Source: Magallana gigas
Lineage: Eukaryota
Length of the DNA stretch: 64,000 nt
Direction: 5' to 3'
NCBI RefSeq assembly: GCF_963853765.1
Contig: NC_088857.1
Coordinates: forward strand, 3,844,001 to 3,908,000
The position numbers and the translations under genes are program-made. The notes below the pieces were generated by a model, which worked only from the letters and a program-made list of their open reading frames with translations, did no database searches and had not been told where the DNA came from. Below are positions 4,621 through 32,863 of the stretch, one piece after another; within the stretch, counting starts at the first letter, position 1, and each line of letters opens with the position of its first letter.

Positions 4621-7266
4621 CCAATTGGTCATATTAAATATGTATTCTTTTTAAAAGAAATCTACTTTACTATAATGAAAAAACTCCGCAAAATACACAG
4701 TTAAATTTGTACCTTGTACAGAATACACCTTTACTATAATATATGGCTTTATTTAGCTAGTGATCGATTCCTGTTGATTGCTTAAAATCAGCTTTTTCTT
4801 AAACCAAAAGAAAAGAACCTAACAAAAACTCTATTGTATACACCTAAGATTTATAATTTGAATAAGCTAAGTTTCTGTGAAATGCTTGCAAACATCCCAA
4901 TGTCAAATTAGCATTTCAACTATAATTTAATATGTTCAGGAATTTTATTATAATAATATTTAAATAAAACCCCGAATTAAAATAAAAAAAAAAAAACACA
5001 CTTCACGTCGTATATACAATTTTATTTGAGTTGAAAGGAAAAGGTATCATAAATTAACTGGCTTCAATATGAGATTAGTTGTAATATCACGCAGTGTTAA
5101 AACTTTTTGGTTGAGGTTGAAAAGTCCATATTGATGATTTATTCATCATAAGTCAGTATCTCAGTACCAAATATCAATACCAATTTTGGAAGTAAAAAAT
5201 CTGAGTATTTAAGAAAAAATTATTATAATGTTTCATAAACAAAATCATAAGAACCGACAAATACTAGTAACATAACACATACCTAATACAATTCACTTTC
5301 TTTATTGTATTCCTAAGTATGATTACATCTATTTTCTGATTGTTATTCACACAGGCATGACTAAACAGAAATCTACGCAATTCAAAGCACGAGAAATATG
5401 TTCGCGGAAGAATATACATATTATTTTATTTGTTAAAACCCGTTAAAGATGTACTTTTAAAATTTTTAAAACAATATATTAATTAATGTGATAAGTGCTT
5501 TGCTTAGCTTTGAAAAAAAATTGTATAATAATAAATAATTGCTACCTCATTCATTGAGCTGTTCCATGTACTTTTGCTGCTTTTTTGCATGAATTACTTC
5601 TTGACTGCTCAGGACTAAAGACATACTATACTCTATTCCAAGATATCCTCGATTCACACTTTGTTTAATTATTCGATAGCTATAAAAACCTCAGGGTTCA
5701 AACGATGTCATTAAAAAGTATAAAAATATACTTTTTTGGTCTCCATTCGGGATACGAAGTTATCTACATGTAGCATTGCAATAAAACAATAATCTTCAAT
5801 ACTAGCTACGTACCTTCACACACCTCACTCGCCAAAAAGGAAGAGGAGGTTGGATGCGGCAGTCTGTATTCCCTCAACTATCAGCCCGATTAGACCATTA
5901 CTTGATGTGGATGGCCCCGCAGTGTTCTTGAAAAAGACCCTTTACCTAAGATATCTGTATCCTCTAGAAGACCTAGACACAGCGTGTCGAGCAGGGCATT
6001 TGCGAGCAAAGAGTCATCATTTGCCATTTGAAACTCTGACCATGTTTTGTAAATATTGTCTGCCAGAAGGACTCGTTTTAAATCTTTTTGTGAGATCGAA
6101 CAGGTCTGGTCTGTTGTAGATTTCTTTTTAAAGTAAATTTCCATTGTTCTCTAGGGATTTTGTAGGATTTCTCTGATTTTTGCAGCAACTTCGCGAGCAT
6201 TCTCCTGAGAGATACATGTATGGGCAAGTAGGTTACTTTCTATGAAATAATGCTGAAGATAAACATTCTCTAAACATTCCGCCATGTAGGTGAGCACATT
6301 TCCGAGTGCTACCAATATTGTGGAATGGCGATCAAAGAGTGATGGATCTTTTTCTCCACACTTGTGATAAAACGCATTGTTCCAGATGAATGTTGTCAAA
6401 GTATCCGAGTAGCATTCCAAAAATCCTTTTTGAAGGGATTTCAACAGCAACAGGCAGAGTCTCTGATCGGGACTGAAAGACTTTGCTAAAATGTGTTCTG
6501 CTTGATTGAAACCCAGACAGAAATCTTTTGAAGGATTGGGGTCGACAATGGCTTGTTTTGCCACTACGTACATCTCTGCGTTATAGATCTCATCGATTGT
6601 GTCCGGTTTCGGCCAAAGCAAGTCTTTCTTGCTCATCATTCGCTGTTTCCATTCCTCTAAACATGGAAGCTTTCCTTCAAGAGAAAATGCTGCAATAAAA
6701 TCATTGCTCCTTTTGTTAACATATTTAATGCGATGTACTTTCTCTGAGTCTGAGCCGGTCTCAGACTCTCGATCACAAATCCTCTTTGAAGGTGGCATAC
6801 TGTTTTTGGAAGAATCCGCTGATTTAATCAAACCACCGATGCTCTGAAACAGCGGCGAAAAGTTGTTATCCTTAGGGACTGTTTCTGCAAGCATACTGCA
6901 AAGAATAGAAAGAAGATCTATCATGTTGTTCGAAAGATTACTTGATTGAACAGCAGATTGAAAGCTCCACGCATTATCTTCTTCTTCTTCTTCGACTGTC
7001 GACAGGATTTCGGGATCAAAATCTTCATTTTCCTCGATAGAATAAAGTACCTGACTTGTTCCAGGTTTGGCTTCCAGATTGATTTCCAGGTGTTTGGAAT
7101 GCCTTTCCATAGATATCTTGGGGGCAGTCAAGATAGGCTTGAGCTCACTAGATATTGGAAAACCTTTATTCGTAACTTCGAATTCTTTCATAACCTTGCT
7201 GTGGAGATACTTTCCGTCCACAACCAGACCTCTTGAAAAAGATGTTTTGAGCTTGTCTGTACGTAT

Positions 7267-9576
7267 CACAGGATGAATGACCATTTTTAAGTCCTCCTTA
7301 AAGATAGCTTAAAGGTGTTTAAAGGTAGCTTAAAGACGATCTTTAAGCCACCTTTAAGCTATATGTGTTGTTTAAAGGTGGCTTAAAGAAAGCGTAAAGA
7401 TGGCTTAAAGGCAGCTTAAAGACTATCTTTAAGCCACCTTTAAGGACAACTTATAGGTCCTTAATGTCCAAACTTCTTTAAGCCACCTTTAAGCCACCTT
7501 TAAGCTACCTTTAAGCCACCTTTAAGCCATTAAAATTTTTTTTTTCAATATTGTGCTTAATTTCCAACAAAATGTATTAACTTTATGAAAGAAAAGGTAT
7601 AAAACGGTTTTTGTTCTAGAAAGAAAAATGAAAAAAAAATAAAAAAAAATCAGCCACGTTGAGAATTGAACCCGGGACCCTTAGTTTACTAGCATCACCA
7701 CACATCCTCTGGGCCACGACAACTTACATATGTGTGAGCGTTTTTATATCCTATATATCAGTGGATATTGAATCACTGTATTGAATGTGTTTACTTGAAA
7801 AGATTTTGACAAACCATTCAGTTTGTAACAATCAATTATATCTAATTTATAAATTACATGCATGCATGTATTAAGAATGAAATACGGAACTAGGTCTTCA
7901 GTGAACAAAAATATATTATACCTAAATGGAAACCGTTAGGTTCACTATAGTAGGCTTTCTTAGTTAATAAATTTAAACCAAGTAGATATACGTTCATCTA
8001 ATTTATAGCTATAAAAATGTAAGAAAGAAAATGAAATCATTTCTTTTATTAAATGCATTGATACTATTAGGGTATTTGTTCAATTTCCCGCAATTTCCCG
8101 GTTTTCATGATCGCGGCGCCGTTCCAATATGTTTAAATATTTACATGTAATTGTATGTACATGATTTTTAAATTATCAATTCTATAACAAACAAAATTAC
8201 CAATTACCGGTGACGTATTTACTGCATGTGGCAATTGCAAATGACTTGTACATACAATTGTATGTTGTGCCAGGCCGGGTATATTTGACATATTTTCCCT
8301 TATACATATATTTAAATAATCAACCCCTATTTATGATCACCGGTATATTAATTAATTAGCCTCAAGATTTTACTCTTACATACACGTATCGTTAATTTGT
8401 AGACGTAACATTTTTGAAACCCAGAGCTAGGAAATAATACTTTGAAAATGAATTACAAATGTAAATTAACTTTTATTCACTAGACTTATCGTATACTCGC
8501 ACATACTAAGATTCAACGCCTTTAGAAACCCCGACGTGCACCTGGGCACATGACACACCTGTTGTGTATATCTTGTATATTCTGTGTTAGTTCCAGGGGT
8601 TTTCTTAAGTTGGACAAACAATAGACTTTAATTAGATATACACAAACATACACCTGGGCACACGACACAACTGTTGTGTATATCTTGTATATTCTGTGTT
8701 AGTTCCAGGGGTTTTCTTAAGTTGGACAAACAATAGACTCTAATTAGATATACACAAACGAACAAAACTATGTCTAGACAAACAAAGCAGTAATATCCTG
8801 CCCGATATAACAAAGGCAGTTGAGAGTCTTTTCATCTTTAACATGTATCTAGCAGATCTAGAGTTAGAAATAATGAAAATTGAAAAAAAAAATACAAACC
8901 TTAAACCGATTAACAAATTAAATCATGCATTTTTTGGTTCATTATCTTTATTTTGTTTAATAACCGGAGAGAGAGAGAGTGAGAGGGAGAGAGAGAGATA
9001 TATTTTTTTCACCGATTAATTTATAATAGGAAACAAACATACTTTAATTAGTTTTATGCACATATTAAGATACAGAGACTGCGCTCAGCCCTACAATAAT
9101 TTTGAAAAATTTTACAAAAATTATAAAGAAATTTATAACGGCAATCTGTGACCATCGGAGCGGTGCTGATGATAGCGATCTGTGTTTAATGGAGCGACGA
9201 TTAAAACCGCCTGGAACACCCCCCCCCCCTTCCTTGGAAATTATATTATCATTCGGATGACCCCCTCCCATCTCTATAAAAGAGCTTTAAATTTGCATTT
9301 AATATATGTTTTTATTGTTCAGCTTGATCAATATTGACTTAAAGGCCACTTAAAGACAGTGTAAAGGCAGTGTAAAGAGAGCATAAATGCCACTTAAAGA
9401 TGCTTAAAGGTGGCTTAAAGGTCGCTTAAAGAAGTTTGGACATTAAGGACCTATAAGCACTTGCTTAAAGGTGACTTAAAGGCGGCTTAAAGGTTGTATA
9501 GCCTTTAAGCTCCTTTAAGTCACCTTTAAGCCACCTTTAAGGACTTAATTGCTTAAAGATGGTTTTTCGCCCTGTG
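7267..9576. mobile_element. Non-autonomous CMC/En-Spm (CACTA-like) DNA transposon, 2310 bp
   Basis: 25-bp TIRs CACAGGATGAATGACCATTTTTAAG / CACAGGGCGAAAAACCATCTTTAAG (20/25); 3-bp TSD TAT at 7264-7266 and 9577-9579; clusters of the 11-bp CTTAAAGGTGG motif in both orientations at about 7287-7532 and 9337-9557; perfect 34-bp inverted match 7450-7483 / 9424-9457; no transposase ORF. Confidence 0.85.
8539..8759. repeat. Tandem duplication with a 112-bp period inside the transposon
   Basis: CACCTGGGCACA...TTAGATATACACAAAC occurs at 8539 and again at 8651, nearly identical. Confidence 0.9.
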
Positions 9577-11030
9577 TATGTGTACAAAACATGCCAAATC
9601 CCCTCTCTGCTCTAGTGCGTCTACGGGTATGGTGATCCCGGATATAATAAGGTAGTCGTTATCTCCCTCATCCTTGAGGGAACGGAGCCGCAATCCTTTA
9701 ACTGTGCTGCCTGTCAGAATAACTCGCTCTTGTCCGAAATGGGAGGCATCATAAGTGATGTATTTACAATACTTTTCTTGCCTATCGTCATTTGGAACTG
9801 GCTAACTCTGGTCTTCCAAAGTTTTGATATAAGACTCTAGCTTGGTTCGTACTTCGGGGGACATCTTATCCATGTGCAAGCTCTGTGTAAACATGCCTCA
9901 GCATTATCAATATCATTGTAAGGCATCATGTACCGAGACGTAAAAGACGCATTCACCATGAAACGTTTATTTGCCAAACAAAATGTTTTTCTGTGTGGAT
10001 TGACAGTTCGTATCGTTTATTGACGTAATGTCGTGTTCATTAAAATTCATGAGAAGAAATTGTGCTTTTATTCTTGTCAAATTGCCGACCAGAGAGATTG
10101 AGAGGACTTTTTCAAAAGGTTTTTTGGTCGCAGTTACTAGCATTTATTTACCATAAAAATCGGCAAAAAATATTAAAACTGGAACCTGTGTCAGATAATA
10201 TTATTAAAAAGAGGTATAGCGCCTTTTCCGATTATTTCGCCTACACCTGTATTAATACGGCAAGTACTGTTCAAAAAAAGCTTCAGGTACCTAGCTGTTG
10301 TGGTATGATTTTCGAAACCTGCATATACAGTACTTATTTTTTAATGGTGTCTGTAACAACTGATTTGTTATAAATTCTGGAAACTCTGTGTATAACAGTA
10401 GTTGATATTCTGAACCGTGATAAGTTCAAGCAAAGTGCACTGGATCTAAGTGTAAATAGAGTACAGTGTTAATGAAGAGAATTGTCTATATTGGGTGTAC
10501 TCATACTCAGACTGAATTAAACAAGGTAATTTTAAAAAAACCCAGAAGATTAGATATGTGTAACTTAATCTCTCTATTCTGTTCATTTTTCAATTTAAGT
10601 AAAAAAAATTTACTACTTAGTGGATTTGATCCAGCGACCACAAAATCAAAAAGACCTCCGCGTTAGCACTAGGCCACGCATCTAACATTTTCAACAGATG
10701 CAATTTCAATATAGATGGCTATAAATATGATTGTATTAGAAAAGACACTACTTGAAATTTTGTCTAAATTTCCGTACGAAGACCACGTTAAACCAAAACT
10801 AATTCAAAACGTGTACTACGATACCTGTAGAATATAATTTTAATCGGATGTGTTTGGTTTAGAGTGGTTCAAATAGTCAAATATCCAATTTTTTATCGTT
10901 TTCTAACTACTTTCCACTATTAATACAGTTTTTTAAATATAATTATGTGGTTACATCTTTTCAACACAAGGTATAGGCTTAAATTGGTATTCTCGATAAC
11001 GATGGAATGTTCATTGTATTAAAATCAAAA

Positions 11031-11115
11031 GTACCTGCAGGAAGAGCTGATGGGAATCCGCCATGTTTGTGCCGTCAATTGATCCCGGTTCTTTCCTCTT
11101 TTCCCGCTGACCAAT
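11031..11115 (-). promoter_or_regulatory. Candidate promoter and short first exon upstream of the cGLR pseudogene
   Basis: Minus strand: CCAAT box (11111-11115), AAACATGGCG with ATG at 11064, 10 codons (MADSHQLFLQ), then donor CAG|GTACTT (GT at 11034-11033). Confidence 0.35.
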
Positions 11116-29659: not shown

Positions 29660-29799
29660 NNNNNNNNNNNNNNNNNNNNNNNNNNNNNNNNNNNNNNNNN
29701 NNNNNNNNNNNNNNNNNNNNNNNNNNNNNNNNNNNNNNNNNNNNNNNNNNNNNNNNNNNNNNNNNNNNNNNNNNNNNNNNNNNNNNNNNNNNNNNNNNN
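29660..29799. other. Assembly gap
   Basis: 140 consecutive N. Confidence 0.99.
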
Positions 29800-31556: not shown

Positions 31557-32528
31557 CTGGTATTTTGATTCGGAGTCACTGTGATTAGGTTTAAATGTAC
31601 AATAACAATCTTAATGAACTGCAAAAATCTAAAATATATTTTCAGCTAAATAAACAGGATTTAGTATTTCAAATTTATATTGAAACTTTCCGATACATGT
31701 TTGAACGTAAAACTTTGGTTTCAATCATATTATCAGTTACTTGAATATTTTTTTCGACGGTTTTGAAGTTGCAGTACACTTGGAGCAGACAACCAGATGA
31801 GATTTGGAATGTTTGAATCTTTGAACGACTTTAATGAACACATATGGATATAAATAAGACAGGTTTGACGTGCATCACAAAGAACGGGGATCTACTGCCT
31901 AGTCTGTGTGGTATACATTATGCTTTATTCATGAGTAAACTAATCAGACCAGGCTTATAAAACGCTGGTCACCAAAAAAAAACATTTGTAGGAAACACAA
32001 AAAATCATAATTATCCCTCCTATATGACTAGTACAAATGGCAAATCTAGAAATCACTGCTGGCCGAGCAACCCTCGGAAAGCCTCGGGCCATATCAAAAT
32101 ATAAAGGATAAAAGCTTTATATCAGTTATAACATAATAATCAGATATCAATATCTGACTATATTATACTATGGTTATACGTGTGTGTTCTATATATGATA
32201 GAACTAAGTTTTTATGTTGGATAAACTACAACAATGAGGTTTTATAGTAATAAACACCCTGTAAGACTTCGCATGGTTTGAGCAATGAAAAATGACAGAA
32301 AAAATGATTGTTTTAGACAAAAAAAGTCTTGCGAATAAAATTCACACAAAAGGGACAGTAATCGGGGACTGCATCATTGACGACGGTGAAAGTGAGAGAC
32401 ACGGACTCCATGAACAAGCTTCCACTTGTCAATTCGTACAACAGCAATAAACAGGAACGTATTGCACCATTGTAAAAATAGCACTCATATTCTCACAGAC
32501 TACGGGTACACTCGCTCTTTGGAATCAG

Positions 32529-32863
32529 TTATCTCCCCTCCTGACATAGAGACATGGCGGTCATAGTTAGTCCATCAAGTCCGCTCAGTGAGCAGTTATC
32601 GCCCCTGTTCTGATCAAACTGAGCCTCACGGAGGCGCTTTTTCTGCTTCATCCGTCTGTTTTGGAACCAGATTTTCACTTGAGTTTCGTTTAGTCCAAGC
32701 GCCGCGGCGATCTCGATTCGGCGAGCGCGTGTCAGGTACTTGTTGAAATGGAACTCTTTCTCGAGCTCCGTAAGCTGTTTATTCGTGAAGTTTGTTCGTC
32801 CCATATTAGGCTGTGGAGTCCCGGGGGTGGAGGGATACCCATATTCATTGGTTTGTTTCGTCA
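32529..32863 (-). CDS. Hox1: Hox1/labial exon 2 (homeodomain)
   Basis: [59 protein letters not shown] is a paralog-group-1 homeodomain. Acceptor CCTTTTCTTTACAG (AG 32865-32864), phase 1, compatible with exon 1. Confidence 0.97.

What the first reader, a model, noticed from the sequence alone, without database searches (positions are those of the whole stretch)
5890..9894. Hidden cGAS-like receptor (cGLR) gene, split by a transposon, next to Hox1
Seen: the ORF track shows only a 377-aa fragment. Deleting 7267-9576 plus one TAT copy gives TTT GTA CAC ATA CGT ACA GAC AAG (FVHIRTDK), in frame. This joins an unlisted N-terminal segment with TGSTVKGLRLRSLKDEGDND (hGS..DxD) to a downstream D in NDFIAAF and a Mab-21 C-lobe. 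The restored reading is about 556 codons with two in-frame TAGs (9802-9804, 6151-6153). Known: Mab-21/cGAS-fold cGLRs are cyclic-dinucleotide-producing innate sensors upstream of STING and are expanded in bivalves. Inference: this is a decayed immune sensor that retains all three catalytic acids, and it may be intact in other haplotypes or relatives.
Basis: partly seen in the sequence, partly recalled or inferred. Interest (0 to 1): 0.85.

Follow-up and report, generated by a model that had tools for sequence, protein, structure and literature searches.

The report
Dead oyster cGAS-like gene split by transposon
This is a broken copy of an uncharacterised cGAS-like (Mab-21 fold) gene in the Pacific oyster. 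A 2.3-kb jumping element splits it, and two stop codons, a frameshift and a lost tail disable it, so it is a well-read but ordinary casualty of a fast-evolving gene cluster.

Summary
Window 7267-9576 is a 2,310-bp TIR transposon with CACAGG…CCTGTG ends and a TAT duplication. The genome holds at least 35 full-length copies. Removing it plus one TAT joins two minus-strand segments in frame, and the junction (…CFVHIRTDKLKT…) is identical to intact paralogues.

The genome is Magallana gigas. An intact paralogue, XP_019922014.3 (599 aa), lies 62 kb away. Its AlphaFold model matches oyster and coral cGLRs and mouse cGAS best (Z 18-19). The GS, DxD and third-Asp motifs are invariant or nearly so across 24 oyster and mussel homologues, and the window copy keeps them.

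The locus is more broken than reported:
- TAG 9802-9804 replaces a Lys codon and TAG 6151-6153 replaces a Glu codon.
- A 1-bp deletion at 5934/5935 shifts the frame.
- The last ~33 codons are gone.
- The true start lies in an upstream exon (11035-11064).

One public DNA run carries the exact empty site, so the insertion is polymorphic. That run still has both TAGs and the frameshift, so no intact allele was found.

Filing the family as a cGLR rests on fold and motifs. Its DxD-to-Asp spacing (~210 aa) and near-neutral pI are atypical. Overall it is an ordinary pseudogene in a tandem immune-type cluster.

The parts
11035..11064 (-). Exon 1 coding part (MADSHQLFLQ), followed by a GT splice donor at 11033-11034.
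   Evidence: tblastn of P0001. The spliced contig L026 matches 11117-11037 and then 9883-9577. Sequence and translation checked.
9883..11034 (-). Intron (GT…AG) between exon 1 and the large coding exon.
   Evidence: P0003 and P0010 also carry a short upstream exon (MAESSQPT…).
9577..9882 (-). Upstream part of the large exon, the NTase N-lobe. It holds Gly-Ser at 9706-9711 and Asp-Asn-Asp at 9655-9663. 9577-9579 is one copy of the TAT target duplication.
   Evidence: Translation. 85% identical to P0001 residues 34-136. GS and DxD are invariant or nearly so in 24 homologues.
9802..9804 (-). In-frame TAG, where homologues have Lys (AAG in the sister contig L026).
   Evidence: Unchanged in DNA runs X1, X2 and X3.
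7267..9576 (-). 2,310-bp non-autonomous TIR DNA transposon. It has CACAGG termini, 11-bp subterminal CTTTAAGCCAC repeats and a 112-bp internal duplication. No ORF exceeds 68 aa. The insertion is polymorphic.
   Evidence: Empty-site contig in run X2 (joint 7262→9576, skipping 2,313 bases).
7264..7266 (.). Second copy of the TAT target-site duplication.
   Evidence: 3-bp duplications flank 11 of 12 copies of the family.
6154..7266 (-). Downstream part of the large exon. It holds the family-specific insertion, the third catalytic Asp codon (6700-6702, in NDFIAAF) and the Mab-21_C domain (6172-6462).
   Evidence: Pfam PF20266, E 7.5e-7, residues 269-365. PDB cGAS hits. 80% identical to P0001. Motif coordinates.
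7282..7284 (-). ATG inside the transposon end. It opens the 377-aa ORF (6151-7284) that ORF lists show. It is not the native start.
6151..6153 (-). In-frame TAG, where homologues have Glu.
   Evidence: Unchanged in DNA runs X1 and X2.
5849..6150 (-). Remnant of the C-terminal helical extension. It has a 7-codon deletion (within 6058-6081) and a 1-bp deletion between 5935 and 5934 that shifts the frame. Homology ends at about 5849-5866, and the last ~33 codons and the native stop are missing.
   Evidence: No gaps at the frameshift in X1, X2, X3 or X15 contigs, so all four share it.

Best explanation
The locus is a non-functional member (pseudogene) of a tandem cluster of bivalve-specific Mab-21/cGAS-fold nucleotidyltransferase-like genes on Magallana gigas chromosome piece C5.

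Its intact relatives (for example XP_019922014.3, 62 kb away) have two coding exons. They encode ~600-aa proteins with:
- a cGAS-like catalytic core (Gly-Ser loop, DxD, third Asp);
- a ~120-aa family-specific insertion between the second and third catalytic elements;
- a Mab-21_C lobe;
- a helical C-terminal extension.

This copy evolved under purifying selection for most of its history. It then lost function through two nonsense mutations (Lys to TAG, Glu to TAG), a 1-bp frameshifting deletion and loss of the C-terminal end. Separately, a 2.3-kb non-autonomous cut-and-paste transposon inserted into the coding exon. Its 3-bp target duplication and CACAG termini make it CACTA/EnSpm-like by inference. 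That insertion still segregates in the population, so the element most likely landed in a gene that was already dead.

Shown: the anatomy, the lesions, the transposon family, the empty-site allele, and the fold and motif conservation of the family.
Inferred: catalytic activity of the intact paralogues, the order of events, and the transposon superfamily.
For: Species and paralogue:
- The neighbouring ORF equals the M. gigas protein P0003 at 100% over 590 aa.

Reading and lesions:
- The joined reading is colinear with intact homologues and the junction peptide is identical.
- The stops lie at Lys and Glu positions of the homologues.
- The frameshift and the lost tail are shown.

Transposon:
- At least 35 full-length copies at 91-96% identity.
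- Conserved termini and 3-bp duplications at 11 of 12 copies, with no fixed target sequence.

Population data:
- Run X2 has a contig that skips exactly 2,313 bases (element plus one duplication).
- Its other contigs cover both TAGs and the frameshift site, and all their differences lie elsewhere.
- X1 contigs span both filled junctions.

Family:
- Mab-21_C passes the Pfam cut-off.
- The Mab-21 NTase profile aligns, below threshold, from the KDFIAAF stretch onward. hhalign puts DFIAAF on QIIPAF of the oyster mab-21 orthologue.
- The P0003 model (pLDDT 68, pTM 0.70) matches Cv-cGLR1 (Z 18.7, 320 aa), Sp-cGLR1 (18.0) and mouse cGAS (17.8).
- D78, D80 and D290 are invariant, and G62 and S63 are at least 90% conserved, in 24 homologues of 40-80% identity.

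Selection:
- dN/dS on the window branch is 0.27, against 0.35-0.39 on intact paralogue branches.
- Since the split from the sister contig L026, the window lineage has 14 non-synonymous and 6 synonymous changes, near the neutral 3:1 ratio.
Against: - Only three DNA runs were laid, and one may be the reference individual. An intact allele at low frequency is therefore not excluded.
- Logan contigs drop rare variants.
- The TAG2 state in X3 and in the RNA run X15 could not be read.
- The low branch dN/dS means the death is recent, which leaves room for functional alleles or orthologues somewhere.
- The order 'stops first, transposon later' is inferred from one empty-site individual.
- Catalytic competence of the family is untested, and residue geometry in the model could not be inspected.
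- The transposon superfamily was not confirmed with a transposase-bearing copy.
Confidence: 0.9

Rival explanations
1. The gene is still functional in part of the population. The reference carries a null haplotype, and intact alleles (no transposon, sense codons, full tail) segregate, as in presence/absence and null polymorphism of other oyster immune genes.
For: - The transposon insertion is polymorphic.
- Branch dN/dS is 0.27, so constraint lasted until recently.
- The nearest relative, contig L026, is spliced, has no transposon and has AAG at the first TAG.
Against: - The empty-site run X2 has both TAGs and the frameshift. X1 and X3 agree wherever they are covered.
- No protein of 204-649 aa more than 80% identical was found in 5.8 billion sequences.
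- L026 is only 94.4% identical. Its source is unknown, and it is itself interrupted by another repeat at the position equivalent to 6928.
Confidence: 0.07
2. The locus makes a truncated, catalytically dead protein. The 377-aa ORF (6151-7284) starts at an ATG supplied by the transposon end and would encode the insertion, the third Asp and the Mab-21_C lobe. Such a product might act as a decoy or regulator of its paralogues.
For: - The ORF exists and begins inside the transposon.
- Low-depth contigs from an RNA library cover 5700-7266.
Against: - The RNA-run contig stops matching exactly at 7266, so it does not read out of the transposon. DNA carry-over in that library is not excluded.
- No promoter evidence was found.
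- The ORF lacks the N-lobe strands needed for the fold.
- The window lineage shows near-neutral change since its split from L026.
Confidence: 0.03
3. The family is not a signalling cGLR. It would instead be a non-enzymatic or differently acting Mab-21 branch, like MAB21L1, MiD49/51 or TMEM102, so the pseudogene says nothing about cGAS-STING immunity.
For: - MiD49 (Z 15.4) and MAB21L1 (Z 14.8) score only a little below the cGLRs.
- The Pfam NTase domain is below threshold and the N-lobe is undetectable by sequence.
- The DxD-to-Asp spacing is ~210 aa, against the X50-90 rule of the cGLR census.
- pI is 6.1-8.0.
- The family's motifs are absent from the held parts of the cGLR census tables.
Against: - The Gly-Ser loop and all three acids are invariant or nearly so from oysters to mussels. 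That is hard to explain without catalysis.
- The top structural matches are active cGLRs and cGAS.
- The census files were truncated when stored, so absence from them is not informative.
Confidence: 0.3

Closest known systems
Animal cGAS-like receptors (cGLRs), e.g. Cv-cGLR1 (PDB 8gjw), Sp-cGLR1 (8gjy), mouse cGAS (7bum)
   Same: - They are the best structural matches of the intact paralogue's model (Z 17.8-18.7, about 320 residues aligned).
- The h[QT]GS loop (LTGS), the [DE]h[DE] pair 14 residues later and a third Asp in a D-h-h-(P/A)-A-F strand are shared.
- A Mab-21_C lobe is shared.
- Lineage-specific expansion in bivalves is shared.
   Different: - About 210 residues lie between DxD and the third Asp, against 50-90 in the published definition. 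The extra ~120 aa are helical or disordered.
- There is a C-terminal helical extension of about 120 aa.
- pI is near neutral, against above 8.5 for dsDNA- and dsRNA-sensing cGLRs.
- The N-lobe is not recognised by Pfam.
- No activity data exist.
- The window copy itself is a pseudogene, with DND in place of D-F/Y-D.
XP_019922014.3, 'uncharacterized protein' of Magallana gigas (P0003), and its oyster and mussel homologues
   Same: - It belongs to the same family and the same tandem cluster on C5, 62 kb away.
- It is 74% identical to the joined reading.
- It has the same two-exon layout.
   Different: P0003 has an uninterrupted 599-codon frame. The window copy has a transposon, two TAGs, a frameshift and a missing tail.
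CACTA/EnSpm-type (CMC) non-autonomous DNA transposons
   Same: - Termini begin with 5'-CAC.
- Subterminal short repeats are arrayed in both orientations.
- Target duplications are 3 bp with no fixed sequence.
- There are dozens of near-identical copies with no transposase ORF.
   Different: - The termini read CACAG rather than CACTA.
- No autonomous partner or transposase was identified here, so the superfamily is inferred only.
- PIF/Harbinger also makes 3-bp duplications, but it prefers TWA targets, which are not seen here.

Membership tests
Mab-21 / cGAS-fold superfamily | Mab-21_C (HhH/H2TH-like) C-lobe | tested here: met
   PF20266 on the window's own 371-aa piece: E 7.5e-7, 29.7 bits against a cut-off of 24.1. 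Also found on all full-length homologues.
Mab-21 / cGAS-fold superfamily | Pfam Mab-21 nucleotidyltransferase domain (PF03281) | tested here: inconclusive
   Nothing on the window's pieces. Below threshold on intact paralogues (E 0.005-0.025, 15-17 bits against 24.1), covering only profile positions 122-194. The N-lobe is not detected by hhalign.
Mab-21 / cGAS-fold superfamily | Bilobal cGAS/OAS-type nucleotidyltransferase fold | tested here: met
   Tested on the intact paralogue P0003, not on the broken copy. VIA-align gives Z 18.7, 18.0 and 17.8 to Cv-cGLR1, Sp-cGLR1 and mouse cGAS over model residues 10-480. Foldseek gives E about 1e-7. The Atlas neighbours are Mab-21 clusters.
cGLR (definition of Li et al., PMC9980059) | G[S/G] activation-loop motif, h[QT]GS | tested here: met
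   LTGS is encoded at about 9706-9717. G62 and S63 are at least 90% conserved in the family.
cGLR (definition of Li et al., PMC9980059) | [DE]h[DE]h located 8-20 residues after GS | tested here: met
   D-N-D-Y lies 14 residues after GS (9655-9663). Both acids are kept, but the middle residue is Asn where paralogues have Phe or Tyr. D78 and D80 are invariant.
cGLR (definition of Li et al., PMC9980059) | Third acid h[DE]h located 50-90 residues after the DxD | tested here: not met
   The Asp that aligns with the third-acid strand (KDFIAAF, D290 in P0003; codon 6700-6702 in the window) lies about 210 residues after DxD. The acid is present and invariant, but the published spacing rule fails because of a family-wide insertion.
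cGLR (definition of Li et al., PMC9980059) | Ligand-activated synthesis of a nucleotide second messenger that activates STING | not testable with these tools
   No biochemical data exist. pI of 6.1-8.0 is unlike that of nucleic-acid-sensing cGLRs.
Processed or unitary pseudogene versus duplicated pseudogene | Disabling lesions relative to intact paralogues, shared by independent individuals | tested here: met
   Two TAGs, a 1-bp deletion and a lost tail. The stops and the frameshift are present in runs X1 and X2, and partly in X3. The intron is retained, so this is a duplicated pseudogene, not a processed one.
CACTA/EnSpm (CMC) DNA transposons | CAC… terminal inverted repeats, 3-bp target duplication, subterminal repeats | tested here: met
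CACTA/EnSpm (CMC) DNA transposons | Related autonomous element that encodes a CMC-type DDE transposase | not tested
   No autonomous copy was sought. The 2.3-kb element has no ORF above 68 aa.

The most novel reading that the evidence does not exclude
The intact relatives of this pseudogene (XP_019922014.3 and its oyster and mussel homologues) may be a distinct, so far uncatalogued clade of active cGLR-type enzymes. Its marks would be a ~120-aa insertion inside the catalytic core, a helical C-terminal extension and a non-basic surface. Such a clade would sense something other than long nucleic acids, and it would have been missed by motif-spacing filters. The window locus would then be a recently lost, still-segregating member that records rapid birth and death in that clade.
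Probability: 0.25. Interest if true: 0.55.

Novelty: new member of a known kind. Interest (0 to 1): 0.25.

Why it matters
For the locus itself, little. Pseudogenes and polymorphic transposon insertions are commonplace in oyster immune-type gene clusters.

It has three modest uses:
- It is a clean, datable example of a cut-and-paste insertion into a coding exon, with both the filled and the empty alleles recovered. That makes it a ready marker.
- It shows this 2.3-kb element family moved recently enough for the insertion to be still polymorphic.
- It points to an uncharacterised oyster and mussel family with a cGAS-like fold, an invariant catalytic triad and an atypical core insertion. The intact neighbour of this locus is a better target for biochemical study than the dead copy.

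Tried and rejected
- Pfam on the 75-aa N-lobe piece and on the small pieces found nothing.
- hhalign of the family's N-terminal profile against the oyster mab-21 orthologue gave no match. N-lobe homology therefore rests on fold and motifs only.
- I looked for XP_019922014 and four family-specific peptide strings in the supplements of the cGLR census (PMC9980059). None was found, but the files are truncated, so this is uninformative.
- I first read the match of the P0001 mRNA 3' UTR to window 5722-5786 as bounding a 345-bp deletion. I rejected this because that stretch is a dispersed repeat with dozens of copies. I claim only that homology ends at about 5849-5866.
- High-depth RNA contigs at 6219-6290 and 9784-9885 first looked like expression and splicing of this locus. 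I rejected this because their overhangs encode IPQKKTREIA and MAESSQPTM, which belong to a P0010-type paralogue.
- I considered a tRNA-derived SINE inside the transposon. ARAGORN found nothing, and all Rfam hits were below gathering scores.
- A literature search for the three SRA run numbers of the relatives' contigs gave no hits, so the source species of L025, L026 and L027 remain unknown.
- Earlier findings of this scan held nothing near this place or under these words.
- The look-up of sequencing runs failed twice as busy before it answered.
Full report
**What is in the sequence**

On the minus strand, an open segment runs from 9882 to 9577. It meets a 2,310-bp insert (9576 to 7267), after which the same frame continues from 7266. 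The insert begins CACAGGGCGAAAAACC… and ends …CATCCTGTG, an imperfect 26-bp inverted repeat. ATA lies on both sides (TAT on the + strand at 7264-7266 and 9577-9579). The two TAGs are at 9802-9804 and 6151-6153, also as stated.

**Is the join real?**

The 371-aa downstream piece finds 38 homologues, all from oysters and mussels. The full-length ones are 540-650 aa. The joined reading, with X at the stops, aligns colinearly with them at 78% identity to P0001 and 74% to P0003. The junction peptide CFVHIRTDKLKT is identical in P0003, P0006 and P0010. The insert therefore sits inside a conserved coding exon, not in an intron. The first TAG falls on a conserved Lys and the second on a conserved Glu.

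**The insert is a transposon**

Over exactly positions 1-2310, it matches at least 35 other places on all chromosome pieces at 91-96% identity. Twelve copies were inspected. All keep the CACAGG…CCTGTG termini (two with a single change), and 11 have a 3-bp direct duplication of variable sequence: ATA, TAA, ATT, GTT, GAA, AAT, TGG and TAT.

The element has 11-bp CTTTAAGCCAC subterminal repeats in both orientations and a 112-bp internal tandem duplication. No ORF exceeds 68 aa. CAC termini, subterminal repeats and unspecific 3-bp duplications fit CACTA/EnSpm-type elements best. That assignment is inferred, because I did not find a transposase-bearing copy.

**Genome and neighbourhood**

The window is C5:3,844,001-3,908,000 of a 564-Mb assembly. 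An ORF 62 kb away (C5:3,787,997-3,789,091) equals the Magallana gigas protein XP_019922014.3 (P0003) at 100% over 590 aa. The genome is therefore the Pacific oyster, and the locus belongs to a tandem cluster.

The cluster also holds:
- a second pseudogene at C5:3,795,505-3,797,229;
- a very decayed third copy inside the window at about 16,169-17,083.

A second cluster of three copies lies on C6. A Hox1/labial-type homeobox is at about 32.5-32.7 kb in the window, so 'next to Hox1' is correct.

**Corrected gene model and full lesion list**

P0003, P0001 and P0010 begin with a short upstream exon. In the window its counterpart is 11035-11064 (MADSHQLFLQ), followed by GT. The acceptor AG is at 9883-9884 and exon 2 starts at 9882. 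The ATG at 9873 is therefore internal.

Besides the transposon and the two TAGs, there are four more changes:
- a 1-bp deletion between 5935 and 5934 that shifts the frame; the homologous reading then continues in another frame to about 5849;
- loss of the last ~33 codons and the native stop, with no counterpart found in the first 20 kb of the window;
- an in-frame 7-codon deletion;
- an in-frame 2-codon insertion.

The 377-aa ORF seen in ORF lists starts at an ATG inside the transposon end (7282-7284).

**Other individuals**

Contigs of four public runs were laid on 5700-10000.

- Run X2 (DNA) has a contig joining 7262 to 9576. It skips 2,313 bases, with 4 ambiguous letters at the joint.
- Run X1 has contigs across both filled junctions (7194-7296 and 9552-9834).

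The insertion is therefore polymorphic. In X2, however, the contig 9629-9934 has three differences, all elsewhere (9667, 9679, 9852). The contig 5977-6195 has two (6008, 6010), and 5811-6002 has none and no gap. The empty-site individual therefore carries both TAGs and the frameshift.

X1 shows the same for all three lesions. X3 shows it for TAG1 and the frameshift.

In the RNA run X15, only low-depth contigs (2-7x) cover 5700-7266. One stops matching exactly at 7266 and has 27 further letters, which is compatible with an empty site but was not verified. The high-depth X15 contigs belong to a P0010-type paralogue, because their overhangs encode P0010-specific peptides. Transcription of this locus is therefore not shown.

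**Nearest relative**

A 1,059-nt Logan contig (L026, run SRR8325616, species unknown) is 94.4% identical in DNA. It is spliced from exon 1 to exon 2, has no transposon and has AAG at the first TAG. It shares derived residues with the window copy, such as YITY, KISMERHS and VLYSIEENEDF. From the position equivalent to 6928 it runs into a different dispersed repeat. It is therefore not evidence for an intact gene.

**Timing**

In a three-way comparison with the genes of P0003 and P0001, the window branch has dN 0.058, dS 0.212 and omega 0.27. That is no higher than the intact branches at 0.35-0.39. The copy differs at 4 of 89 otherwise invariant columns.

Since the split from L026, window-specific changes are 14 non-synonymous to 6 synonymous, close to the neutral ratio. 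L026 has 5 to 4. The numbers are small. The gene was therefore constrained for most of its life and died recently. The point lesions are shared by all sampled individuals and the transposon is not, so the element most likely inserted after the gene was already dead. This order is inferred.

**What the family is**

- Pfam gives only Mab-21_C above threshold.
- The Mab-21 NTase profile aligns below threshold from the KDFIAAF strand onward.
- hhalign places DFIAAF on QIIPAF of the oyster mab-21 orthologue.
- The N-lobe is not detectable by sequence.

An AlphaFold model of P0003 built with 24 homologues has pLDDT 68 and pTM 0.70, with a well-modelled core. Its best matches are:

| Structure | Z |
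|---|---|
| Cv-cGLR1 (320 residues aligned) | 18.7 |
| Sp-cGLR1 | 18.0 |
| mouse cGAS | 17.8 |
| MB21D2 | 16.1 |
| MiD49 | 15.4 |
| MAB21L1 | 14.8 |

Bacterial CD-NTases follow at Z 10-13.6. The Atlas neighbours are Mab-21 clusters of molluscs and cnidarians.

D78, D80 and D290 are invariant, and G62 and S63 are at least 90% conserved, in sequences down to 40% identity.

Measured against the published cGLR definition (PMC9980059), the GS loop and the DxD pair fit. The third acid lies about 210 residues downstream rather than 50-90, because of a family-wide insertion. pI is 6.1-8.0, not above 8.5. I therefore file the family in the Mab-21/cGAS-fold superfamily with confidence. I call it 'cGLR-like with a complete triad', with activity unproven.

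**Verdict**

The biology is ordinary: a recently dead duplicate in a birth-and-death cluster, later hit by a still-polymorphic non-autonomous transposon. No intact allele was found. The more interesting object is the intact, uncharacterised paralogue family.

Noticed in passing
window ~32,500-32,670 (minus strand): Homeodomain of Hox1/labial type (…[53 protein letters not shown]…). The Mab-21-like cluster therefore abuts the anterior end of the oyster Hox region.
   Followed up: partly
window ~16,169-17,083 (minus strand): A third, heavily decayed copy of the same family, at 23% identity to P0001 with many stops. Recognisable GNFDYLII and AFSAKGKL remnants survive.
   Followed up: no
G000:C5:3,795,505-3,797,229 (L031; L005-L007): Another pseudogene of the family lies between the intact P0003 gene and this window. 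It is 87% identical in DNA to the P0001 mRNA and has TAA and TGA stops.
   Followed up: partly
L025 (SRR22371049), L027 (SRR18452390): Full-length transcripts P0001 (639 aa) and P0010 (612 aa) have no locus in this assembly more than 89% identical. They come either from other Crassostrea species or from presence/absence paralogues. P0010-type RNA is abundant in run X15 (depth about 115).
   Followed up: partly
L026:736-1059: The nearest relative's transcript contig runs, at the position equivalent to window 6928, into a dispersed repeat that matches this genome at only 75-77%. This is either an independent disruption or a chimeric contig.
   Followed up: partly
window 5722-5786 and L025:2269-2335: A short dispersed repeat of about 70 bp, often in inverted pairs and MITE-like, lies in the 3' region of family members. 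It has dozens of copies genome-wide.
   Followed up: no
window 29,660-29,799: A run of 140 N (assembly gap or masked stretch). I left it untouched.
   Followed up: no
G000:C6:9,685,053-9,700,573 (L003, L004, L008-L010): A second tandem cluster of the family. Two copies are intact (622- and 626-aa open frames, 39% identical) and one is fragmented.
   Followed up: no
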